Assembly (NCBI RefSeq): GCF_902713615.1
Contig: NC_052152.1
Location: 166,406,712-166,470,711 of the forward strand
Direction of reading: 5' to 3'
Length of the DNA stretch: 64,000 nt
Source: Scyliorhinus canicula
Taxonomy: Eukaryota
Position 1 is the first letter of the stretch. Each line of letters opens with the position of its first letter. Positions 19,714-53,227 of this stretch are shown here, in pieces. Under the pieces are notes generated by a model. That model worked only from the letters and a program-made list of their open reading frames with translations. It searched no databases and was not told where the DNA came from. A program made the translations under genes and the position numbers.

Positions 19714-20312
19714 TGTTATGGGCCAGGGTTTAGAGAACCCCAAAGTGTGTCATGGAGTTCACCTGACCCACAACTTTTAATAGATTGTGGTATGGGGAGC
19801 ACACGACCCACTCTACAAGTTTGGTACAGCAGAAATGGAAATGTAATTTTTAAAGCAAAGCAATGTTTATTCTATGAACTCAAGTTAAGCTTTTTGAAAC
19901 ATACAGTGAAGATCTTAGCAACCATCAATTCAAATACAACCCCCAAAGAATACAACAATAAGTAATCCTTAATAACTTCCCAAACAACATCCAGAAGACA
20001 GAAGAAACACATTTTAACAGAAGCACATCAGGTTTACTTTCACTACTGAAAACATTTCTAATTCTGAATTCACCAAATAATCAAAGATAGTCGTTTGATG
20101 GCAGAGAGAAGATAGTACACCTGCATGGTCTGGTTTCAGCTCCAACACTGAAAACAAAACTAAAACACACCCTGCACCAAACAGCCTAAAAAGAAAGTAA
20201 AAAGCTGACAGACAGCCCAGCTCCACCCACACTCTGACATCACTGATAAACATCCATTTCTAGAAGGTACATTTCTTAAACACCCATTTCTTAAAGGTAC
20301 TCTCGCATGACA
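19714..20312 (-). repeat. 3' LTR of the Gmr1-like element
   Basis: TG/CA termini, adjacent PPT, homology to 29231-29559. Confidence 0.9.
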
Positions 20313-23300
20313 CCTCCCCCCCCCCGCAAAAAAATAAACCATCAACTTCAAGATGGTTTCATTTTTCACCTTTTCACCATTCGTTAAGAAATGCACACAG
20401 TAAATATACTTTTTTGTTTAAAAAACAACACCTGAAAACAGATATAATAATATAGTCCATTTTTGTTCTTTTTCCTCCAACTGAAATTGCTTCCATTCAT
20501 CACATTCGTGACAAAGCATCGGCTATCACATTTTCCCGTCCTGCCACATGTACTATTTTTAAATAAAATGGCTGTAACACTAAACTCCAGCGAAACAGCC
20601 TTGCATTGTTTTTCCAGAATCGCTCCAAAACGTCAACGGATTATGATCCGTAAATATAACGGTGTCAGACGGATTGCTGGTCACATGAATGTGAAAATGT
20701 TGCAAAGCCAGCACCAAACTCCAAAGTCTCCTTCTCAATCGTGAAATACTTTTTCTGGTGAGAATTCAATTTCTTTGAAAAATAACCAATAGGCTGCTCT
20801 AGCCCTTCGTCGTTGTCTTGTAGAAGCACCGCACCTACACCCACATCACTCGCATCAACCACCACTTTGAATGGTTTTGTATAATTTAGGATGGCTAACA
20901 GAGGAGCAGTGGTTAACACAGCCTTCAGGCCATCAAATGCCTGTTGACACTCCGCTCTCCACTGGAATTTGTTACGCTTCTTGAGCAAGTCCATCAGTGG
21001 AATGACCACACTGCTAAAATGTGGTACAAATTTCCGGTAATATTCACTCATACCAACAAATCGCATTATTTCCCGTCGTGTCGAGTCGAGGGTATCAGAA
21101 ACTCCCCAATAACTTTTGTTTTCACATCCCGTGGGACCATTTGACCCTGTCCGATTGTATGGCCAAGGAAAGTGACTTGGGCCTTTCCAAATTCACTTTT
21201 GACTAGGTTTATCACCCAACCCGCCTCCTGAAGTCGATCGAATAACTCCATCAGATGTTTCAAATGTTCTTTCCATGTCTGGCTGAAAATTACCAGATCG
21301 TCGATGTATACCGCACAATTGGGTAATCCTGAAACAACTTTGTTAGTTAACTGTTGAAATGTGGCTGGTGCGTCTTTCATGCCAAATGGCATAACTTTGA
21401 ATTGGTATATACCAGCTGGAGTCACAAAAGCTGAAATCTCCTTTGCCCTTTCGGATAAAGGTACCTGCCAGTAACCTTTAAGTAAATCCAATTTAGAAAT
21501 AAAAGCTGATTGTCCCACTTTCTCAAGGCAATCCTCCAAACGTGGGATAAGATAAGAGTCCGTTCTTGGAACAGCATTAACCTTTCTATAGTCCACACAA
21601 CTGTTGGGTACCGTCTGGTTTTGGTACCATCACTATGGGTGAGCTCCATTGGCTGCAACCCACTTCAATTATGCCATTTTTAAGCATATTCTCAATCTCT
21701 TTGGTAGCCTGTGCCAATTTTAAAGGGTTCAGTCTATATGGGTGTTGTTTGATTGGAACAGCCTTTCCCACATCTACAAAATGTATAGCCATTTTAGTAC
21801 TTCCCAATTTATCTCCACAAACTTGCCCATGTGATATCAATAACTCTTTCAGGTCAGTTCATTTTCCTCTGGAAGGTAACTCAACAATGTATCCCAATTT
21901 TTATGAACATCCTCGTTTTCCAATTTAATTTGAGGTATCTCAAATTCACAGTCATCTGGATTTGGTTCGTCACTTTGAGTTAGAATCATTAAAACCCGCT
22001 CCTTTTTCTCTCCTTCCCTTTCAAATTACCTTTTAAGCATTTTCACATGACATACTCGGTGAGTCTTCCTTCTATCTGGTTTTTTTACCACATAATTCAC
22101 CTCACTTAATTTCCTTTCAATCTGATAAGGTCCACAAAACCTAGCTTTTAAAGGTTCACCTACCACTGGTAACAATACTAAAACTTTATCTCCAATGGCA
22201 AAACAACGAACTTTGGGTTTCTTGTCTGCGACCCGTTTCATCACATTTTGTGCAAATTTTAAATGTTGCCTAGCCAATTCACTTGCTCTTTTTAATCGTT
22301 CCCTACAATTTGACACATAATCCAATAATGTAACTTCCGATTTCTCACTCACCAATTTTTCTTTAATCAATTTAAGTGGTCCCCTTACCTCATGACCAAA
22401 AATTAGGTTGACTCATTAGGTGCATCCCTAATAGCAAACAGTACGAATGGAATTCCTTTATCCCAATCCTCTGGATAATCGTGACAATAAGCCCTCAACA
22501 TTGTCTTTAATGTCTGATGCCACCTTTCTAATGCTCCCTGCGATTCTGGATGGTACGCAGTTGATTTAAATTGTTTTATTCCTAGCTATCTACAAATCCT
22601 TTGAATAACCTTGAGGTAAAATTTAATCCTTGATCTGATTGTATTTCTGTGGGTAGTCCATATCTAGTAAAGAATTTAAGTAACTCCTCCACAATCTTTT
22701 TAGCTGTAATATTACGTACTGGAATGGCCTCTGGAAACCTAGTAGACACATCCATTATAGTCAAAAGATATTGATTCCCACTTTTCGTTTTCGGAAGCGG
22801 TCCTACGCAATCAATTAGGACTTTTGTAAAAGGTTCCTCAAATGCTGGAATGGGTATTAAGGGCGCTGCTTTTTATCACTGCTTGAAGTTTCCCTATCAC
22901 TTGACATGTGTGACATGATTCACAAAATTTAACTACATCTTTATGTAGTCCAGGCCAATAAAAATTATTTTGGATTTTAGCTTGAGTTTTCCTCCCACTG
23001 GTACCTCATGTGCAACCCGCAACAGCTCCTTTCTATATCCTACCAGCAATACTACTTAATGAACTTCTGTCCACTTTTCATCCGCCTGCTCATGTAAAGA
23101 TCTCCATTTTCTCATCAAGACATCACTTTTACGGTAATCACACTCTGGTATACATTCAGATTCCTCTTCCATACATGCTTTCTGATACATCCATTTTATT
23201 TCTATATCTTTCTGTTGTAACTCCACCAGTTTTTCTGAACTAAAAATATCTGCTTCATCCTCCACCTGTTCTTGTTATTTTTCAACCATCGGATCAAAAA

Positions 23301-25205
23301 TTGTTTCTGATAATTGCACTTCAACTTCATCTTCACTCTTTGATTTCTCCTCTTGTCTTAACCTGTGACTTTGCAACCTTGTTACTATGCAATGCGGAAA
23401 AATCCCAGGATATTTGTCCTTCAACACTTCAGTTGTCTGATTTTCCACTGGCTTATCAACCACAATAGGCAACACTCCCACCTGCGATCCAGCTATATAA
23501 TTACCCAAGATAAACTAGTCCTGGACAAGATAGTTTCTCTATTACTCCTACTACCACTTCACCACTCTTCACTGGACTTTCCAACCTGACCTTATATAAT
23601 TGAACACTACTCTGCTCACCCTGAATTCCACATATTACCACCTTTTCTCGCAACATTCTTCCCAAACTACATAACTCCTCATCTCTTACCATTAAATATT
23701 GACCAGCTCCCGTATCTCTTAAAATTGGGACTTCTTTACCTGCTCCTCCTGATACACGTGAGTAAAATTTACCCACACAAGTAAATTCTTTAAAGACATC
23801 TGGCACCTTCTTATCAATCATCTCTTGATCAGGCTATACAATCTTTTGCACATCCTTTGCTTCACTTGGGCTTTCCTTTACCACTTCAACAAACCCCACT
23901 GTCTCATCCTGTTTTACCACATCAGCCTTCCCAGTGCTTTTCTTCAACCACCAACACTGTGACTTTACATGGCCTAGTTTGTTACAGTGAAAATATTTGA
24001 AACATTTCATGTCTCTTTTTCATGCACCGTGGCTGGCTCTGCTGCACAGAAGGGCGGGAAAACGACTGGCAGGGCTATAGTCATAGGGGATTAAATCGTA
24101 AGGGGAATAGACAGACGTTTCTGTGGTCGAATACGAGACACCCGAATGGTATGTTGCCTCCCGGGTGCACGGGTCAGGGTGTCTCAGATCGGCTGCAGGA
24201 CATACTGAAGGGGGAGGGTGAACAGCCAGTTGTCGTAGAGCATATAGGCACCAACAATATAGGTAAAAAACGGGATGAGGTCCTACAATCAGAATTTAGG
24301 GAGTTAGGAGATAAATTTAAAAAGTAGGACCTCAAAGGTAGCAATCTCAGGATTGCGACCAGTGCCACGAGACAGTCAGAGTAGAAATTCAAGAATAGTC
24401 AGAGTAGAATACGTGGCTTGAGAGATGGTGCAGGAGAGAGGGGTTCAGATTTGTGGGACATTGGAACCGGTTCTGGGGGCGGTGGGACCATTACAAATTG
24501 GATGGTCTACACCTGGGCAGGACTGGGACTGGAACCAATGTCCTAGGGGGTGTTTTTGCTAACACCGTTGGGGAGGTTTTAAACTAATGTGGCAGGGGGA
24601 TGGGAACCAGATTAGGAAGTTAGAGGGACAAGTGGTCTGAGGTGCATTTGTTTTAATGCAAGAAGTGTAGCAGGTAAGGCAGACGAATTTAGGGCTTGGA
24701 TTAGTACCTGGGAATATGGTGTTATTGGTATTACTGAGACTTGGTTGAGGGAAGGGCAAGACTGGCAACTGAATATCCCAGGGTACAGATGCTTCAGGAG
24801 GGATAGAAAGGGAGGTAAAAGGGGTGGAGGAGTTGCATTACTAGTCAGAGATGATATCACAGCTGTGATTAAGGAGGGCATGATGGAGGATTCGAGCACT
24901 GAGGCAATATGGATAGAGCTAAGAAATAGGAAGGGTGCAGTAACATTGTTGTGACTTTACTACAGGCCTCCCAAAAGCGAGCGTGACGTAGAGGTACAAA
25001 TATGTATACAGATTAGAGAACAATGTAGGAGCAATAGGTGGTCGTGATGGGAGATTTTTACTTCCCCAACATTGAATGGGACTCATGTAGTGTTGGAGGT
25101 GTAGATGGAGCAGAATTTGTAAGGAGCATCCAGGAGAGTTTTTTAGAGCAGTATGTAAATAGGCAAACTCGGGAAGGGGCCATACTGGACCTGGTATTGG
25201 GGAAT

Positions 25206-27013
25206 GGGGATGGGACAATTGGGCGCGGCCGTTTTGGCACGGCCGTTTGGGCGCCATGGGACAATTGGGCGCAGCCAATTTGGCACGGCCGTTTGGGCGC
25301 TGACGACAGAAATTCTTGTATTCAGAAAACTATTGTATTTGTTGTTGAAACATTCAATTTACTATTTTGAACTGTCAGTTGTGTCAATTTCAGCGGCCGG
25401 CTCACTTTGATCCGGAGAGGGAAGCTGCTCTCACTGAAGCAATCAGCCGGCCGCTGAAATTGACAGTGCCCACTGATTGGAGGGAGAGAGCAGCCGGCAG
25501 TGTCAATTTCAGCGGCCGGCTGATTGCTTCAGTGAGAGAGCAGCTTCCCTCTCCGGATCAAAGTGAGCTGGCTGCTGAAATTGACACTGCCGGCTGCTTC
25601 CTCCCTCCAATCAGAAACATTAAAACTTAAAACTTGGATTGGAGGGAGAGAGCAGCGGGCAGTGTCAATTTCAGCGGCCGGCTCACTTTGATCCGGAGAG
25701 GGAAGCTGCGCTCTCACTGAAACAATCAGCCGGCCGCTGAAATTGACACTGCCGAGGGGGGGGCGGGTGTTGGGGGGGAGAAGAGGGGGGGCGGGTGTTG
25801 GGGGGGAGAAGAGGGGGGGCGGGTGTTGGGGGGGAGAGGAGGGGGGGCGGGTGTTGGGGGGAGAGGAGGGGGGCGGGTGTTGGGGGGGAGAGGAGGGGGG
25901 CGGGTGTTGGGGGGGAGAGGAGGGGGGGCGGGTGTTGGGGGGGGAGAGGAGGGGGGCGGGTGTTGGGGGGGGAGAGGAGGGGGGCGGGTGTTGGGGGGGA
26001 GAGGAGGGGGGCGGGTGTTGGGGGGGAGAGGAGGGGGGCGGGTGTTGGGGGGGGAGAGGAGGGGGGCGGGTGTTGGGGGGGAGAGGAGGGGGGGCGGGTG
26101 TTGGGGGGGGAGAGGAGGGGGCGGGTGTTGGGGGGGAGAGGAGGGGGGCGGGTGTTGGGGGGGGAGAGGAGGGGGGCGGGTGTGGGGGGGAGAGGAGGGG
26201 GGCGGGTGTTGGGGGGGAGAGGAGGGGGCGGGTATTGAGGGGGGCGGGTGTTGGGGGGGAGAGGAGGGGCGGGTGTTGAGGGGGGCGGGTGTTGGGGGGG
26301 AGAGGAGGGGGGCGGGTGTTGGGGGGGGAGAGGAGGGGGGCGGGTGTGGGGGAGACCCCCCTGGGGGTGTGGGGGAGCGAGAGTGGACCTGCGGGTGTTG
26401 GGGGAGAGAGGAGGGCCCTGCGGGTGTTGGTGGAGAGAGGGGGGCCCTGCGGGTGTTGGGGGGGCAGAGGAGGGGGGCGGGTGTTGGGGGGGGGGGAGGT
26501 GAGGGGGGCGGGTGTGGGGGAGACCCCCCTGTGGGTGTGGGGGAGAGCCCCTGGGGGTGTGGGGGAGAGAGGGTCTGACCTCTCCCCCCGCCCCCCGCCC
26601 CCCCATGACTCACAATGGGAAGCGCATGCATAGATTTTTAAATAAATTTAAAACCCCCATCATGGATATCCGCGGCTCGGTTACTTTGCATTGGTATTCA
26701 CCAAGGAGAGGGACATGACGGATGTTGAGGCTAGGGATGGATGTTTAAATACTCTAGGTCATGTCGGCATAAGGAAGGGGGTGGCTGTCTTGGACCCCAA
26801 CACCCGCGTTATAAAGGGGGACTACTGTATCATGTATGAGTAAGAACACTGGTTTTTAAACAAAATGTAACAAAGTTTGTGCGACTACTAAATTTGATGA
26901 ACACACCTCCCTCATGTTGACGCCAAAACGTCCGGCGCCAAAACAGCCGGCGCCAAAACGGTTGGCGCCAAAACGGCCGCGCCCAAATGGCTGCGCCAAA
27001 ACGTACCTAACCC
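25206..27013. mobile_element. Non-autonomous Mutator-like DNA transposon with repetitive imperfect TIRs
   Basis: 9-bp TSD TTGGGGAAT (25197-25205 / 27014-27022), GGG...CCC termini, inverted arrays of ~15-bp GGCGCCAAAAC-type units. Confidence 0.8.
25755..26530 (+). repeat. G-rich minisatellite, ~27-bp unit G5-7CGGGTGTTG6-8AGAGGA
   Basis: More than 20 tandem units visible. Confidence 0.92.
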
Positions 27014-27966
27014 TTGGGGAATGATCCCGGCCAGGTGGTTGAAGTTTCAGTTGGTGATTACTTTGGGAATAGCGATCACAATTCCGTAAGTTTTAGAATA
27101 CTCATGGACAAAGACGAGAGTGGTCCTAAAGGAAGAGCGCTAAATTGGTGAAAGGCCGAGTATAACAAAATTCGGCAGGAGCTAGGGAATGTGGATTGGG
27201 AGCAACTGTTTAAGGGTAAATCCACATTTGAAATGTGGGAGTCTTTTAAAGAAAGGTTGATTAGAGTGCAGGACAGACATGTCCCTGTGAAAATGAGAGA
27301 TAGAAATGGCAAGATTGGGGAACCATGGGTGATGGGTGGAATTGTGAGACTAGCTAAGATGAAAAAGGAAGCATACATAAGTTCGAGGCGACTCAAAACT
27401 GATGAAGCTTTGGAGGAATATCGGGAAAGTAGGACAAATCTCAAACGCGCAATGAAGAGGGCTAAAAGGAGTCATGAAATATCTTTGGCTAACAGGGTTA
27501 AGGAAAATTCCAAAGCCTTTTATTCGTATATAAGGAGCAAGAGGGTGACTAGAGAAAGGATTGGTCCACTCAAATACAAAATTTATGCGTGGAGTCAGAG
27601 GAAATGAGTGAGATTCTTAATGAGTACTTTGCATTGGTATTCACCAAGGAGAGGGACATGACGGATGTTGAGGCTAGGGATGGATGTTTAAATACTCTAG
27701 GTCATGTCGGCATAAGGAAGGGGGAGGTTTTGGGTATTCTAAGGCATTAAGGTGGGCAAGTCCCCAGGATCGGATGGGATCTATCCCAGGTTACTGAGAG
27801 AAACGAGAGACTAAATAGCTGGGGCCTTAACAGATATCGCTGCAGTATCCTTGCACACGGGTGAGGTCCCAGAGGACTGGAGAATTGCTAATGTTGTCCC
27901 TTTGTTTAAGAAGGGTAGCAGGATAATCCAGGGAATTATAGACCTGTGAGCTTGACGTCAGTGGTA

Positions 27967-28146
27967 GGCTGGTTTAGCCCACTCGGCTAAATTGCTGGCT
28001 TTTAAAGCAGATCAAGCAGGCCAGCAGCACGGTTCGATTCCCGTACCAGCCTCCCCGGACAGGCGCCGGAATGTGGCGACTAGGGGCTTTTCACAGTAAC
28101 TTCATTGAAGCCTACTCGTGACAATAAGCGATTTTCATTTCATTTC
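27967..28146 (+). mobile_element. Short tRNA-derived SINE in CR1 RT
   Basis: Box B GGTTCGATTCCC, shared tail, (CATTT)n end; CR1 resumes afterwards. Confidence 0.85.
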
Positions 28147-29889
28147 AAACTGTTGGAGAAGATACTGAGGGATAGGATCTATTCACATTTGGAAGAAAAT
28201 AGACTTATCAGTGATAGGCAGCATGGTTTTGTGCAGGGAAGGTCATGCCTTACAAACCTAATAGAATTGTTTGAGGAAGTGACAAAGTTAATTGATGAGG
28301 GAAGGGCTGTAGATGTCATATACATGGACTTCAGTAAGGCGTTTGATAAACTTTCCCATGGCAGGTTGATGGAAAAAGTGAAGTCGTATGGGGATCAGGG
28401 TGTACTAGCTAGAAGGATAAAGAACTGGCTGAGCAACAGGAGACAGAGAGTAGTGGTGGAAGGGAGTGTCTCAAAATGGAGAAAGATGACTAGTGGTGTT
28501 CCACAGGGATCTGTGCTCGGACCACTTTTGTTTGTGATATACATAAATGATCTGGACGAAGGTATAGGTGGTCTGATGAGCAAGTTTGCAGATGATACTA
28601 AGATTGGTGGAGTTGCAGATAGCAAGGAGGACTTTCAGAGAATACAGCAAAATGTAGATAGATTGGAGAGTCGGGCAGAGAAATGGCAGATGGAGTTCAA
28701 TCCAGGCAAATGCGAGGTGATGCATTTTGGAAGATCCAATTCAAGAGCGGACTTTATGTTCAATAGAAGAGTCCTGGGGAAAATTGATGTACAAAGAGAT
28801 CTGGGAGTTCAGGTCCATTGTACCCTGAAGGTGGCAACGCAGGTTGATAGAGTGGTCAAGAAGGCATACAGCATGCTTGCCTTCATCGGACGGGGTATTG
28901 AGTACAAGAGTCGGCAGGTCATGTTCCAGTTGTATAGGACTTTGGTTAGGCCACATTTGGAATACTGCGTGTAGTTCTGGTCACCGTATTACCAGAAGGA
29001 TGTGGATGCTTTAGAGAGGGTGCAGAGGAGATTCATCAGGGTGTTGCCTGGTCTGGAGGGTGCTAGCTATGAAGAAAGGTTGAGTAGATTAGGATTGTTT
29101 TAGTTGGAAAGACGGAGGTTGAGTGGGGAACCTGATTGAGGTCTACAAAATTATGAGAGGTATGGACAGGGTGGATAGCAACAAGCTTTTTCCAAGAGTG
29201 GGGGTGTCAATTACAAGGGGTCACGATTTCAATAACTTCCCAAACAACATCCAGTAGACAGAAGAAACACCTTTTAACTGAAGCACATCAGGTTTACATT
29301 CACTACTGAAAACATTTATAATTCTGAATTCACCAAATGATCAAGAGATAGTCTTTTGATGGTAGAGAGAACAACAGTACACCTGCTTGGTCTGGCTTCA
29401 GCTCCAACAGAAAATGAAACTTAAACATACCCTGCAGCAAACAGCATAAAACGAAAGTAAAAGCTGACGCCGCCCGGCTCCACCCATACTCTGACATCAC
29501 TGATAAATACCCATTCTAGAAGGTACATTTCTTAATCATCCATTTCGTAAAGGTACTCTTTGGGGTCAGTTATGTGATAGGATGGTTTTAGGTCAAGCTA
29601 TTCAGCTGACTAGGTCCCTGGTTAAAGCCCACTGTGTTTGGTGCAGGCAGAGAGCTCTGCCTTTGTCCATAACTGGTTGGTGTTGATGTCTTGTCCACCT
29701 TGCTTTGTTGGTTTGTTTACACAGTGCAAGGAATGTTAGCTGATGTGGTTCTACTATGTCCATTTTTAAACAGCTCAGAAACATCCAGAATTTCCATCAT
29801 GTCATCATGACGGCTATTCTATCAGTTCAGCCTATTGTCCATTTCGAAAAAAATTATAAAGAAGCCAGGTTGACACACACAAGAATATC

Positions 29890-30606: not shown

Positions 30607-32605
30607 GGGCGCAATTCTCGTGAAAGATTGCGAAGTGTGGTAACAAGCGGGAATTGCTCAGTCCGGCAACATTATTCAACATTAGTTGGCCCACTCAACG
30701 AGGCCTCACAAACTTCTCGCTGCAAATCAAAGCCCGGCAGCTTATTCGCCAGGATCGCACTCATTAGCCTCCCACTAACAAGGTCAAGCAGCACTTAAAC
30801 AGCTCTTGCTCAGCCAACCCCAGTCAGCCCACAACAATGGCGCTGAGAAGATCAGCCCCAGATTCGGTGAGCTCCTGGATGCGGTGGAGATCTGGAGGGA
30901 TGTCGTGTCCCTACGAGGGTCCCGGAGGGCGAGCCACAGGGCAGCCAGTACTGTCTGGGACAAGGTGGCAGCGGCTGTACGTTCTGGGAGCATGACCAGG
31001 AGGATTGGCCTCCAGTGATGTAAAGAGGTCAATGACCTACACCGGGCAGCACGGGTGAGTAGACACCAAAGCCCACCCTCCCGAGACCTTTCCGCCCACA
31101 TGTGAGCATCCAATCCTCCCTTNNNNNNNNNNNNNNNNNNNNNNNNNNNNNNNNNNNNNNNNNNNNNNNNNNNNNNNNNNNNNNNNNNNNNNNNNNNNNN
31201 NNNNNNNNNNNNNNNNNNNNNNNNNNNNNNNNNNNNNNNNNNNNNNNNNNNNNNNNNNNNNNNNNNNNNNNNNNNNNNNNNNNNNNNNNTCCTTCAATCA
31301 CACTCCTAGGACCCAGCTGGGTCCCAGCCTGATGCTGAGCCGCTGGAAGTGGGTTACCCTGAGCTGATGGAGACAATAGGATGTGGCCGGGACATTCCGA
31401 GGGAGATGTCAGCATCACTCCAGCACCCCAAGAGGCGATGGGCGCAGGAGATGCCGCCAGCAATGCGTGGCACTGAGGCTAACTTTGCTGGGGTGGCAAC
31501 CGCAGTGCAGAGCTGGTGCACGATGTCAGGCACCATGAGTGAAGGTGTACAAGGCATCATGCAGTCGGTGATGTCTACGGCTGAGGGTCTCGGCAGAATG
31601 CCCGACTCACTGGGGGATGTGACCTACTACAGGCTGACCTTGATGAGGTTCTGCGGGACATGTCCCGTTCTGAGATGGGAATGGCTGAGGTGCTGCAGAG
31701 CTTGTCCCAGTCACTGGTGGATATTGTTGTGACGCTGCAGAGCATGTCCCGATTACTGAGGAGCACCAACGAGGGCGTTGATACACTGGTGCAGATATCG
31801 ATGGGCCACCAGGGCTGGCAGAACCAAATGATGCAGGGGCAACCAAGGTTCAAACCATTTGCCCGTCCGTCCCATGGTGAACCCAGGGCCTCTGGGCACA
31901 GTGGCAGGAGGGGCACGGGGTGCCAACTGGAACTGTCCCGTGGAGTGGCGATGGTGCCACCAGCTCCCTTGAGTTCCAACCCTCTGATGAGGCTGTGTGT
32001 CAAGGTCAGCACTCGTGACTGGATGGCACAGCTGTGCATGTGTTGCCAAAAGTTCTCCGGCCCTAGAGCCCCCAGAGGACGTCCGCCAAGAGCATCGAAG
32101 GCCACGGGATGAGGTAAGCAGCTGGCTCCCTCCATGTCAGAGGTGCATCCTGGGGACACACCTAGACTTGGCGGCAGAGCTAGGAAGGTGAAGCTCGTTG
32201 AGGATCACAGAGCACCGGGGGAGGGGGGGTAGAGGAGGATCACTAAGGGCACCGGTGGAGGGGCAAGAGGCCGCGAGGGGAGAGAGTGGAGGGTAAGTAG
32301 GGGGTGGCAGGGGTGAGGGGGCAGACTATCAGGCGATCCTTGAGCAAAACCAGTATCATGCCACTGTCACAGTCTTCCACAATGTGGGCTGACCTCCGAA
32401 CCCATGGCCAATCTCGACAGGCATTCAGGTAGTGATTATTGATTTCTCGCCACGCTACGGCAAGATCCCGATTTCGCAAGGGAGCCGGCCAATTGCATCG
32501 CAAACTGTTTGGCACCTGACATGGTTCTCGTTTTTGGCCTCTCCCGCTATTCACTGGCCTTGTTTCTCTTGAGCGAGTGCACAACAAGGTTGGAGAATTG
32601 CACCC
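30607..32605 (+). mobile_element. Non-autonomous PIF/Harbinger transposon with decayed Myb/SANT gene
   Basis: TIRs GGGCGCAATTCTC / GAGAATTGCACCC, 3-bp TSD TTT; ELLDAVEIWRDVV...WDKVAAAV; contains N-gap 31123-31289. Confidence 0.85.
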
Positions 32606-32791: not shown

Positions 32792-35700
32792 GTAAGTTGT
32801 TCACCAGATTGTAAAATCAAAGCAACCTGTTCATATTTGTCACATGGGATGAAATAAGTCTCGACGTGGTGGATTCTTGTTTAACTCATTGAGAAAGGGT
32901 TNNNNNNNNNNNNNNNNNNNNNNNNNNNNNNNNNNNNNNNNNNNNNNNNNNNNNNNNNNNNNNNNNNNNNNNNNNNNNNNNNNNNNNNNNNNNNNNNNNN
33001 NNNNNNNNNNNNNNNNNNNNNNNNNNNNNNNNNNNNNNNNNNNNNNNNNNNNNNNNNNNNNNNNNNNNNNNNNNNNNNNNNNNNNNNNGCACCAGCTTTT
33101 AGTATTGTGTCGACACAGACAATTCACTTGCATTCCTTTGCTTCTCCATGGGTTGTAGTCTCTCGCTAAGGAAATATTCCAATTTGCCTTTCTCTGATTC
33201 CACGTGGAACATCATTTTCTTTTGCTTTTCTGACTTTCTTGTCTATTTATCCTTGCCATCTATCCGTGCCATTTTGTAACTTTCTTGTCCCATCTCTTCA
33301 ATTAATGTGCCTCTTAACGGTGCACTTTACAATCTTGGAGCACAGCATAGTAATCAGCATAGAACCCTGGGCGGTACCACAGTCACAACATGCCAATGAG
33401 AAAAAAGTTTCCTTTAACCCCAATCTATGTGTCCTACTTTCAACTAATTACAGACCCGTGCAATCTTGCTTGTTCTTATTTTACAATTTCTCTTTTACAG
33501 AGCCTCATCAAATGACTTCTGGAAGTTCATACAGACAATATTTGTACACACTTCCTAATTCACCATGTCTCAAAAAAGCAACTGAAATAGTCAAACGTTT
33601 TTGCGGGAGGCCATTTAGCGCATCCTTCTTATTTAATCACTTGTTAAAAATTGGATGTGAACTACAGGAGATGCTATTGATTGTGCCAGCTTCGTGTGCA
33701 TGCCATCATGGATGGATGAAAGGATATGTAGAATGATGCACCCAAGACTGAACACATAGTCATTGCGGCAGCAACCACACATTTCCATTAGGTCAAATCA
33801 CTTCAGGGCAAACTCATTGAAGGTGATAGATATATAAATGATTATTTGTTTCTTCAAATTGCTTCAATTGTGCACCACGCAGAAACTGTAGGTAGCCCTG
33901 TAGAAGGATCATGCAGAACACGGAGAAGGATCATGTAGATTTGAAAAGTTAACTCTGTTTCTCTCCACAAATGCTGCCAGATTGCTGAGTTTATCTAGCA
34001 TTTTCTGTTTTTATTATGCAGAATATCCAGCTACCTGAAGGTGGATTTTCTGTTTGATATTGTTCACATGCACATGTAAATAGGCATGTATGTGCCTGCA
34101 TAAAGGTAATATGCAAAGCTACTGAAGCTCAAAGATTAAATAACATTATTTCAAAGTATCTTGGCCTTGTTTGCAAATCTTAATCTCTATTTTTTTAAGA
34201 TTCCTTCCTGTTTATTTCTTTTGTTCTCATTTATTTCATTTTAATATTTTTGTCTGTGGATGTGCCTTTAAGCAGAAGAGTGCTTGCCAGGACAGTGTGT
34301 TCCTAGGTTTTGTATTTTGGAGAGGAGAAACCAGACTCTTGGGTGCCAAGTGAATCTTAGCAATCGTTTTTTGGAGGAAGTTGGTACGATTGGCTAATTG
34401 ACCAGCAGTGGGTTGGCCAGAGGCAGTGTTCTGCCTGACAACAGTTAGGTTTGTGTGTGCGTGTCTGTGTGTAGCTGGAGCAACCAAGGGACTGGGCTTG
34501 GGCACCAGGGGGAAACCTGTCGACTTTGAGCAAGCATGCTAAATTTTAGTTTCATAAAGGGCAATCAATTTAATTAACAGCAATGTTACAGTTCTAGAGA
34601 ATAGAGCAAGCAAGATCAAACAGAGTTTCCACAGAGCAAAAGCTTTTCTTGCTTTGAAATTGTTTGCTGAGCATGCTTTTGTAAAGGAAGGATTAGGAAC
34701 AGATAAAAGGCATGCGAATTGTATGGCGGATTTCAGAAAACTACAGGTAGAATAAAGAGGGGAAATGTAGACAGGACTATGTATGTTTGTAGCTCAACAA
34801 TGGCCGGTAAGTTAAATACAAAGGAGAAAAAAGCAACTTAATCTGACCAGTTCAATGAGGGCTTTTAAAAAGCATTTTTAGCATCATTGCAGATCTTCAC
34901 AACTCTGACTGCCTATTTCATATGGGTGAATATATGAGCCAAGGAGTGTGGAGGTCAAATTTCGGGAAGCATGTTCTCCAATTGCAAAGTAAACATGTTT
35001 AATACTAGGACGAATGAACGGAATCAAATGAGATAGGCATAGGTTACTGTGGATAGATTTTAAAGTGGCTCACAAAATAGTGGGAGCAGGAGGAAATAAT
35101 ATAACAAAATATGATGTTACACTAAATGGGTGAAGTGTTTTTGGATTGGTTAAATTCCAAGTGATTAGGTTTTGTATTGATATTGGGTGAAGATTTGGTC
35201 TGGTTTTCATGAACAGGATGGTTCAATGTCAGGAAAATTAACTCTTTAAAAAAAATTCTTGTCAGGCAAGGGGTTGCCACTTGAAGCAAGATTTTTGAAT
35301 GTCCTGAATAATTTATTAAAATGTTATTCCTGGAATGTTGATGTCACGGGCACGCCAGTATTTATTGCCTCGTCCCGGTTGCCCTTGAAAAGGTGGTGGT
35401 GAAGGTACACACACAGTTTCAAGTTTAAAAGACTGCAGTGCAAGTCTCTACTGAACTGATGTAGAATGCCTGCTTACAGAGGGAGTGATGATGGCAAGCC
35501 ACATAGGGCATGTAGCATTGTTGGATTTCAAAACCCAAACATTCCCATTTTCATGATTATGTGTCACTGTGTTCCCCACTATATACCAACTATTCTCGCG
35601 TATCAACCATTTGTTGTACTATTCAGTCTCTGCACCTGCATTGCATAATCTGTCCAGGCCCCTAAATGGTATGCATGGGCACTGTCATTGGCTGTTCATT

Positions 35701-53036: not shown

Positions 53037-53227
53037 GAAATGAAAAAATGAAATGAAAATCGCTTATTGTCACGAATAGGCTTCAATGAAGTTACTGTGA
53101 AAAGCCCCTAGTTGCCACATTCCGGCGCCTGTCCGGGGAGGCTGGTACGGGAATCGAACTGTGCTGCTGGCCTGCTTGGTCTGCTTTAAAAGCCAGCGAT
53201 TTAGCCCAGTAAACGAAACCAGCCCCT
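53037..53227 (-). mobile_element. Short tRNA-derived SINE within a CR1 tail
   Basis: Reverse complement of 27967-28146 with (AAATG)n. Confidence 0.85.

What the first reader, a model, noticed from the sequence alone, without database searches (positions are those of the whole stretch)
26682..26781. MULE carries an exact 100-bp copy of its own flanking host DNA
Seen: 26682-26781 is identical over 100 of 100 bp to 27625-27724, CR1 sequence ~610 bp outside the element's right end, in the same orientation. Identity to this decayed local CR1 copy suggests capture in situ after insertion. Known: Pack-MULE capture in plants is attributed to gap repair with ectopic templates. Inference: a snapshot of Pack-MULE-like acquisition from the adjacent flank in a vertebrate.
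Basis: partly seen in the sequence, partly recalled or inferred. Interest (0 to 1): 0.75.

Follow-up and report, generated by a model that had tools for sequence, protein, structure and literature searches.

The report
Transposon patched with neighbouring LINE DNA
A short jumping gene sitting inside a dead LINE in a shark-type genome has had 5 of its own bases replaced by a 94-base copy of the LINE DNA lying 943 bases away, a clean single-locus example of a repair-by-copying process already documented in animal transposons.

Summary
In detail: 26682-26781 equals 27625-27724 at 100 of 100 bases, and the flanks on both sides are unrelated.

- **The host element.** It is an 1807-bp element with no transposase (25207-27013). 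It has a 10-bp target-site duplication, imperfect inverted ends of about 100 nt, a palindrome and a G-rich minisatellite. It sits in a decayed LINE that encodes an endonuclease and a reverse transcriptase.
- **Other family copies lack the piece.** Contigs from two samples of the species and from a relative read ...GGTTAC-AACGC-GGGTGGCTG... at this site.
- **What was actually gained.** The novelty is 94 bp (26685-26778) replacing AACGC. It is bounded by 3-bp microhomologies (TAC and GGG; chance of both about 0.006). The breakpoint lies in the 5' arm of a 10-bp hairpin.
- **The donor is the local LINE.** The piece carries two letters where the local LINE differs from its family: T at 27635 (family C, 96-99.6%) and T at 27705 (family A, 60-99%).

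So the copy was made at this locus, after insertion, by microhomology-guided template switching during repair or replication.

Three things remain open: read support for this particular junction, any role for a transposase, and MULE identity beyond the 10-bp duplication. Capture from nearby DNA with microhomology is already described for animal TIR elements, vertebrates included (PMC8277862). This is a new member of a known kind, of modest interest.

The parts
25197..25206 (.). Left copy of the 10-bp target-site duplication, TTGGGGAATG
   Evidence: Read directly. Paralogous LINE copies read ...CTGGACCTGGTA followed by a single TTGGGGAATG and then ATCCC (table 7, loose ends before 27014).
25207..27013 (.). 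Non-autonomous TIR element, 1807 bp, MULE-like by TSD length. High-copy and young family.
   Evidence: TSD and ends. No coding ORF apart from repeat-derived ones. A family contig of 123 nt at depth 130 is identical to 26828-26950 (table 8).
25207..25305 (+). Left terminal inverted repeat region built from reiterated 14-15-nt motifs
   Evidence: Alignment A1. Motif CGCCAAAACGGCCG occurs 3 times on the minus strand here against 0.22 expected in the whole window. TRF rows.
25381..25754 (.). Palindromic block, including 118-nt arms 25495-25612 and 25637-25754 that are 94% complementary
   Evidence: the repeat finder I1-I7 and I9.
25754..26520 (.). G-rich minisatellite, 28-nt unit, about 28 copies
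   Evidence: TRF; the repeat finder D1.
26682..26684 (+). Left microhomology TAC, shared by the unmodified element and the LINE source (27625-27627)
   Evidence: joint 26684->26779 with AACGC between; (observed microhomology 3).
26685..26778 (+). 94-bp templated insert copied from LINE 27628-27721. It replaces AACGC of the family form.
   Evidence: Identity. Absence from family contigs of X1, X5 and X9, tables 5 and 5c.
26779..26781 (+). Right microhomology GGG, shared by the element and the LINE source (27722-27724)
26779..26810 (+). Remainder of the element's internal hairpin. The family form has AACGCGGGTG, a 17-nt loop, then CACCCGCGTT (3' arm at 26801-26810). The insert destroys the first 5 nt of the 5' arm.
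   Evidence: DNA fold of the family form against this copy.
26915..27013 (-). Right terminal inverted repeat region with four copies of the 14-15-nt motif
   Evidence: 15-nt period, 26921-27003.
27014..27023 (.). Right copy of the 10-bp target-site duplication
   Evidence: table 7.
27625..27724 (+). Donor stretch in the flanking LINE, between the endonuclease and the reverse transcriptase. It carries the private letters T27635 and T27705.
   Evidence: In one search, table 3, the family reads C at 27635 in 96-99.6% of depth in all four runs, and A at 27705 in 60-99%..
24020..29232 (+). Decayed, 3'-truncated LINE of the CR1/L2 type (subclass not tested). It is interrupted by the TIR element and by a SINE.
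   Evidence: Pfam: Exo_endo_phos and Exo_endo_phos_2 (both weak, below the curated cut-off) and RVT_1 at 2.4e-28. Stops and frameshifts. At least 26 positions in 27014-27960 where over 90% of family depth differs from the local copy. 3' end.
27967..28145 (+). tRNA-derived SINE inserted in the LINE. A bystander that shows the age of the LINE copy.
   Evidence: 94% identical to 53046-53224 on the minus strand, plus other copies. The sequence shows the LINE reading frame resuming after it.

Best explanation
After a non-autonomous, MULE-like TIR element inserted into an old LINE copy, a DNA strand being synthesised across the element came off its template at an internal hairpin. This could have happened while repairing a break or gap, or at a stalled fork. 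The strand re-annealed through 3 bases (TAC) to the same-orientation LINE flank 943 bp away, copied 94 bases, came off again, and re-annealed through 3 bases (GGG) to the element 5 bases beyond where it had left. The result is a 94-bp templated ('filler') patch that replaces AACGC. It is the same process as the cis 'gap-filling' route that produces single-copy Pack-TIR or Pack-MULE-like elements. Shown here: the duplicate, its absence from other family copies, the local origin of the donor, the direction LINE to element, and the microhomologies and hairpin position. Inferred: the template-switch mechanism itself, and whether the trigger was transposase excision or a spontaneous break or stall. 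The patch has no expected function.
For: (1) The exact 100/100 duplicate, with only two copies in the window. (2) Family contigs skip the piece. The joint 26684->26779 with AACGC between has depth 758 (3 contigs) in X1, 1906 (4 contigs) in X5 (a second sample) and 45 (1 contig) in X9 (a related organism). The variants GCAACGC and ATGCAACGC are also seen (tables 5, 5c and 7). (3) The donor is the local LINE copy. The local T at 27635 stands against C in 97.4, 97.0, 99.6 and 96.3% of family depth. The local T at 27705 stands against A in 78, 69, 60 and 99%. The piece has the local letter at both positions. Other LINE copies differ from the local one by about 6-16% (table 8). (4) The direction is LINE to element. 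Organism C has the LINE stretch in abundance but shows no depth on element-specific bins (table 2). (5) There are 3 bp of microhomology at each junction. The simulated chance of at least 3 bp at both is 0.006. (6) The breakpoint falls in the 5' arm of a 10-bp-stem hairpin of the family form. About 160 bp away is a 767-bp G-rich minisatellite, and further on a palindrome with 118-nt arms. (7) The donor is retained, so the event was copying and not cut-and-paste. (8) The pattern matches the published one: 56.9% of animal Pack-TIRs lie under 15 kb from the parental copy, most under 5 kb, and 67.6% have microhomology, median 2 bp (PMC8277862).
Against: A consensus or assembly error is therefore not formally excluded. 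Look-ups for ORFs crossing the junctions found no independent contig. It was not tested whether other copies carrying the piece exist elsewhere in the genome. Only 2 private donor letters fall within the 100 bp, and 36 further rows of differences were not displayed. A 943-bp jump is long for typical polymerase-theta templated insertions, although it is ordinary for gap-repair fillers.
Confidence: 0.8

Rival explanations
1. Assembly or polishing artefact: the 94 bp were written into the consensus by the assembler and are not in the animal's DNA.
For: Perfect identity over 100 bp in a repeat-dense region. No junction-spanning read evidence was obtained (output truncated; blank).
Against: The patch has proper element sequence on both sides. 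It replaces exactly 5 bp, is bounded by only 3-bp microhomologies, and sits at a hairpin arm. That is the signature of polymerase template switching. Overlap- or k-mer-based software needs long shared words to join sequences. The patch also carries the local LINE's private letters and not the abundant family majority. The assembly crosses a 767-bp minisatellite and 118-nt palindrome arms without a gap, which points to long-read support.
Confidence: 0.07
2. The capture is real but did not happen at this exact site. The element acquired the LINE piece while sitting elsewhere near this LINE copy and then hopped locally, or it belongs to a mobilised multi-copy subfamily that carries the piece (a true multicopy Pack element).
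For: DNA transposons often reinsert nearby (general knowledge). The presence of the junctions at other loci was not tested. The family is young and high-copy (table 8: a contig at depth 130 with 0 differences).
Against: It needs an extra step. The joints listed in both samples of the species and in the relative all lack the piece. Published single-copy cis captures are the rule, and they are explained without transposition (PMC8277862).
Confidence: 0.08
3. The element family has always carried a LINE-derived segment. Identity to the neighbouring LINE would then be coincidence, or the result of later gene conversion between the two.
For: None beyond the a priori possibility. TEs often contain fragments of other TEs.
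Against: Family copies have the 5 bases AACGC at this position, with no LINE segment for conversion to act on (tables 5 and 5c). A random LINE copy would share both private letters with probability under about 1% and would differ at roughly 6-16 positions in 100.
Confidence: 0.02

Closest known systems
Single-copy Pack-TIRs formed by cis gap-filling in animals (Tan et al. 2021, Nat Commun 12:4280; PMC8277862)
   Same: A TIR element gains an internal copy of nearby DNA. The parental copy is retained within a few kb on the same chromosome, there are short microhomologies at the breakpoints, and the result is single-copy. Vertebrates are included: frog 25, alligator 38, zebrafish 8, about 33 in human.
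   Different: That survey defined Pack-TIRs as carrying non-TE sequence and excluded parental copies with TEs in the flanks. Here the captured DNA is itself part of a dead LINE. The donor is only 612 bp outside the element, in the very repeat the element landed in. The piece (94 bp) is shorter than their median of 224 bp. The host is a cartilaginous fish and the element is MULE-like.
Pack-MULEs of plants (rice, maize, Arabidopsis)
   Same: A non-autonomous Mutator-like element with long TIRs and a 9-10-bp TSD carries foreign DNA. This is thought to arise by gap repair with template switching (as summarised in PMC8277862).
   Different: Pack-MULEs carry host gene fragments, are usually captured in trans from unlinked loci, and are often multicopy after transposition. 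Here the captured DNA is a non-genic LINE fragment, taken in cis, with no evidence of later movement.
Filler DNA from abortive or interrupted gap repair at Ac/Ds, MuDR and P elements
   Same: The internal breakpoint has a short templated filler copied from sequence close by, bounded by microhomology. P-element gap filling shows the same distance-dependent cis bias (cited as ref. 21 in PMC8277862).
   Different: The classical cases usually accompany large internal deletions that turn autonomous elements into defective ones. Here only 5 bp were lost.
Microhomology-mediated template switching in replication or repair (FoSTeS/MMBIR; polymerase-theta templated insertions)
   Same: Two switches guided by 3-bp microhomology, a nearby template in the same orientation, and a breakpoint at secondary-structure-prone DNA. 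Tan et al. draw the same parallel.
   Different: These are general genome processes that do not need a transposon. Typical polymerase-theta inserts are shorter and copied from closer by (my own knowledge). Nothing here tells the pathways apart.

Membership tests
Mutator-like element (MULE/MuDR superfamily) | Target-site duplication of 8-11 bp (PMC6446971) | tested here: met
   A 10-bp TTGGGGAATG lies on both sides. Paralogous LINE copies show a single copy at the empty site (table 7). Chapaev was considered and rejected: it has a 3-4-bp TSD and CAC...GTG termini (PMC4079192).
Mutator-like element (MULE/MuDR superfamily) | Long terminal inverted repeats, often tens to hundreds of bp | tested here: inconclusive
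   The ends align over about 98 columns with many mismatches. They are made of inverted arrays of a 14-15-nt motif. The best ungapped core is 23 nt at 96% (I8). This is compatible with a MULE but is not diagnostic.
Mutator-like element (MULE/MuDR superfamily) | MURA-type DDE transposase, or termini shared with an autonomous MULE of the same genome | not testable with these tools
   The element has no coding ORF. Other windows of this genome cannot be read. Earlier scan notes report FLYWCH-MULEs in this genome, but their ends were not available, and a look-up by sequence was blank.
Pack-MULE (strict sense) | The internal region carries a fragment of a host (non-TE) gene | tested here: not met
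   The captured 94 bp are part of a decayed LINE, from the region between the endonuclease and the RT.
Pack-MULE (strict sense) | The element carrying the captured piece has transposed (copies with distinct TSDs) | not tested
   Only family forms without the piece were listed. No genome-wide count of the junctions was possible.
Single-copy cis Pack-TIR / gap-filling capture (PMC8277862) | TIR element sequence on both sides of an internal foreign segment whose parental copy is identifiable | tested here: met
   Element sequence on both sides matches family contigs. The parental copy is at 27625-27724.
Single-copy cis Pack-TIR / gap-filling capture (PMC8277862) | The unmodified element lacks the segment | tested here: met
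   Joints that skip the segment occur in X1, X5 and X9, with AACGC in its place (tables 5 and 5c).
Single-copy cis Pack-TIR / gap-filling capture (PMC8277862) | Parental copy nearby in cis, with microhomology at the breakpoints | tested here: met
   943 bp away in the same orientation. 3 bp at each breakpoint, joint chance 0.006.
Single-copy cis Pack-TIR / gap-filling capture (PMC8277862) | The captured sequence is non-TE (the survey's operational definition) | tested here: not met
   The captured sequence is LINE-derived. It works like a Pack-TIR but would be filtered out by that pipeline.

The most novel reading that the evidence does not exclude
The element family is currently mobile in the shark germline, and this patch was laid down during repair of a transposase-made excision gap. 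The locus would then be a caught-in-the-act first step of Pack-MULE formation by a genuine Mutator-superfamily element in a vertebrate. The internal hairpin would be a recurrent capture hotspot, so that many family copies carry different pieces of their own flanks.
Probability: 0.12. Interest if true: 0.6.

Novelty: new member of a known kind. Interest (0 to 1): 0.32.

Why it matters
This is an unusually legible single-locus record of how a cut-and-paste transposon picks up foreign DNA. The donor, the copy, the unmodified family form, both microhomologies and the hairpin at the breakpoint can all be read together, and no later mutations blur them. It adds a cartilaginous fish and a MULE-like family to the animals in which cis gap-filling capture is seen. 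It also suggests a testable idea: that an internal hairpin beside G-rich and palindromic repeats is the fragile point. It does not reveal a new mechanism, and the captured LINE fragment has no expected function.

Tried and rejected
1. I looked for other copies of the element or of the LINE stretch inside the window (blastn). There were none, so a family comparison within the window was impossible.
2. I looked up ORFs that cross the left (26512-26715) and right (26691-26840) junctions in the public gene-position index, to find an independent contig. Nothing was on record, and this is uninformative.
3. I searched the scan's earlier notes by sequence of the left end.
4. I considered Chapaev/CMC, from a mistaken memory of a 10-bp TSD. 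I rejected it after reading that Chapaev has a 3-4-bp TSD and CAC/GTG ends.
5. I considered a family-borne LINE fragment with gene conversion. I rejected it because family copies have AACGC at that position and no LINE segment.
6. I considered the direction element to LINE. I rejected it because the LINE family holds the stretch in an organism with no depth on element-specific sequence.
The left half is therefore unchecked against reads.
8. I did not run the large protein searches. No protein question was at stake.

Full report
**Observation.** The stretch 26682-26781 is identical at 100 of 100 bases to 27625-27724. The two copies have the same orientation and lie 943 bases apart start to start. 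Similarity ends abruptly on both sides. No third copy exists in the window.

**Setting.**
- The piece lies in an 1807-bp element (25207-27013) flanked by a perfect 10-bp duplication, TTGGGGAATG (25197-25206 and 27014-27023).
- Contigs from paralogous LINE copies read straight through, with a single TTGGGGAATG preceded by ...CTGGACCTGGTA (table 7). The duplication is therefore a true target-site duplication.
- The two ends align as imperfect inverted repeats of about 100 nt. They are built from a 14-15-nt motif, CGCCAAAACGGCCG, present 4 times at the right end and 3 times inverted at the left. The whole window would be expected to hold 0.22 by chance.
- Inside the element are a palindromic block with 118-nt arms that are 94% complementary, a 28-nt G-rich minisatellite of about 28 units at 25754-26520, and a unique part that holds the piece.
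- There is no coding ORF other than those read through the repeats.
- The host sequence is a decayed, 3'-truncated LINE (about 24020-29232, + strand). It has weak endonuclease matches, below the curated Pfam cut-off, and a clear RVT_1 match at 2.4e-28. It has stops and frameshifts and a SINE inserted at 27967-28145. I did not test whether it is CR1 or L2 proper.

**What other copies of the element look like.** I laid Logan contigs on 26530-27960 at 85% or more likeness. The runs were two samples of organism A (X1, X5), a related organism B (X9) and organism C (X10).
- The best-supported joints all skip the piece. The joint 26684->26779 with the letters AACGC in between has summed depth 758 (3 contigs) in X1, 1906 (4 contigs) in X5 and 45 (1 contig) in X9.
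- Minor variants read GCAACGC or ATGCAACGC.
- The family form is therefore ...GGTTAC-AACGC-GGGTGGCTG....
- In the window's copy, 94 bp (26685-26778) stand in place of AACGC.
- The three bases on each side of the 94 bp (TAC and GGG) belong both to the element and to the LINE. This is why the identity measures 100 bp.
- A family contig of 123 nt at depth 130 matches 26828-26950 without a difference. The family is abundant and this copy is young.
- Organism C shows no depth on element-specific bins, while the LINE is abundant there. The stretch is therefore native to the LINE, and the direction of copying is LINE to element.

**Which LINE copy was the donor.**
- At 27635 the local copy has T. Of the family depth, 97.4, 97.0, 99.6 and 96.3% reads C in the four runs.
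- At 27705 the local copy has T, against A in 78, 69, 60 and 99% (table 3).
- The piece has the local letter at both corresponding positions, 26692 and 26762.
- Other LINE copies laid on this region differ from the local one by roughly 6-16% (table 8).
- Across 27014-27960 the local copy departs from over 90% of family depth at 26 or more positions. This is a lower bound, because 36 rows were not displayed.

Together with the 612-bp distance from the element's end and the shared orientation, this identifies the adjacent LINE copy as the template. Zero differences in 100 bp means the copying is much younger than the LINE insertion.

**Junction anatomy.**
- Each junction has 3 bp of microhomology. 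In a simulation with random breakpoints in the element and random 94-bp donors in the flank, 3 bp or more at both junctions occurred in 0.6% of trials.
- In the family form, AACGCGGGTG pairs with CACCCGCGTT (26801-26810) across a 17-nt loop.
- The patch replaces the first five bases of the 5' arm of this hairpin.
- About 160 bp to the left is the G-rich minisatellite, and beyond it the large palindrome.

**Mechanism (inferred).** A nascent strand dissociated at the hairpin. It re-annealed by TAC to the LINE flank 943 bp away, was extended by 94 nt, dissociated again, and re-annealed by GGG to the element. This is synthesis-dependent repair or fork restart with two microhomology-guided template switches. 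The sequence cannot say whether the initiating lesion was a transposase excision gap repaired from the sister chromatid, or a spontaneous break or stall at the hairpin. Tan et al. argue that most single-copy captures in animals are transposition-independent (PMC8277862). The hairpin position fits that view. I lean that way, at about 60:40.

**Comparison with what is known.**
- Tan et al. 2021 found 370 Pack-TIRs in 55 of 100 animal genomes.
- 56.9% of them lie within 15 kb of the parental copy, mostly under 5 kb.
- Microhomology of 1-36 bp (median 2) occurs at one or both breakpoints in 67.6%.

The present case has all of these features. It differs in that the captured DNA is itself TE-derived, which their pipeline excluded. 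It also differs in the host lineage, and in that the element is MULE-like.

- A 10-bp TSD falls in the 8-11-bp range given for MULEs (PMC6446971).
- The Chapaev group has a 3-4-bp TSD and CAC...GTG termini, so the TSD and termini here rule it out (PMC4079192).
- No transposase or autonomous partner was examined, so membership of the superfamily remains a good guess.
- It is not a Pack-MULE in the strict sense: there is no host gene fragment and no evidence of movement after capture.
- Earlier notes of this scan report FLYWCH-MULEs and a Pack-MULE-like element with a cadherin exon in the same genome. I did not test them, and I treat them as context only.

**Limits.**
- The runs are k-mer contigs, which could not span a 100-bp exact repeat in any case.
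- An assembly artefact therefore cannot be formally excluded. The 5-bp replacement, the 3-bp microhomologies, the hairpin position and the private donor letters make it unlikely (about 7%).
- It is also untested whether the modified element exists at other loci.
- The N stretches at 31123-31289 and 32902-33088 were left alone.

**Verdict.** It is a clean new example of a known process, not a new kind of event. Interest is modest.

Noticed in passing
window 19971-20303 and 29231-29559: Direct repeats of about 335 nt, 89% alike, 9.26 kb apart. They bracket a minus-strand LTR-retroelement pol remnant (ORFs at 22026-23821, integrase-like by eye) and the whole LINE. The LINE's 3' truncation point abuts the second repeat. 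They may be the two LTRs of an older element into which the LINE inserted.
   Followed up: no
window 25495-25754: A near-perfect palindrome inside the TIR element: 118-nt arms, 94% complementary, 24 nt apart, with nested shorter inverted repeats from 25381. This is unusual internal architecture for a non-autonomous element.
   Followed up: no
window 25754-26520: A 28-nt G-rich minisatellite (about 28 units, runs of 5-8 G) inside the element. It is probably G-quadruplex-prone, and it reads through as long spurious proline/glycine-rich ORFs on both strands.
   Followed up: no
window 26578-27009 (element-specific bins): The element family is abundant in organism A (two samples) and present in organism B. 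It gives no depth in organism C, where the LINE is very abundant. The family is therefore lineage-restricted and young, or was recently acquired (table 2).
   Followed up: partly
window 27967-28145: A tRNA-derived SINE inserted cleanly into the LINE's reverse-transcriptase region, 94% identical to a copy at 53046-53224 on the minus strand. Several more diverged copies are in the window.
   Followed up: no
window 27740 and 27919-27920: Many family LINE contigs have 2 extra bases after 27740 and 1 extra base after 27919 or 27920 relative to the local copy. These are local frameshifting deletions and further signs that this LINE copy is decayed (table 4).
   Followed up: no
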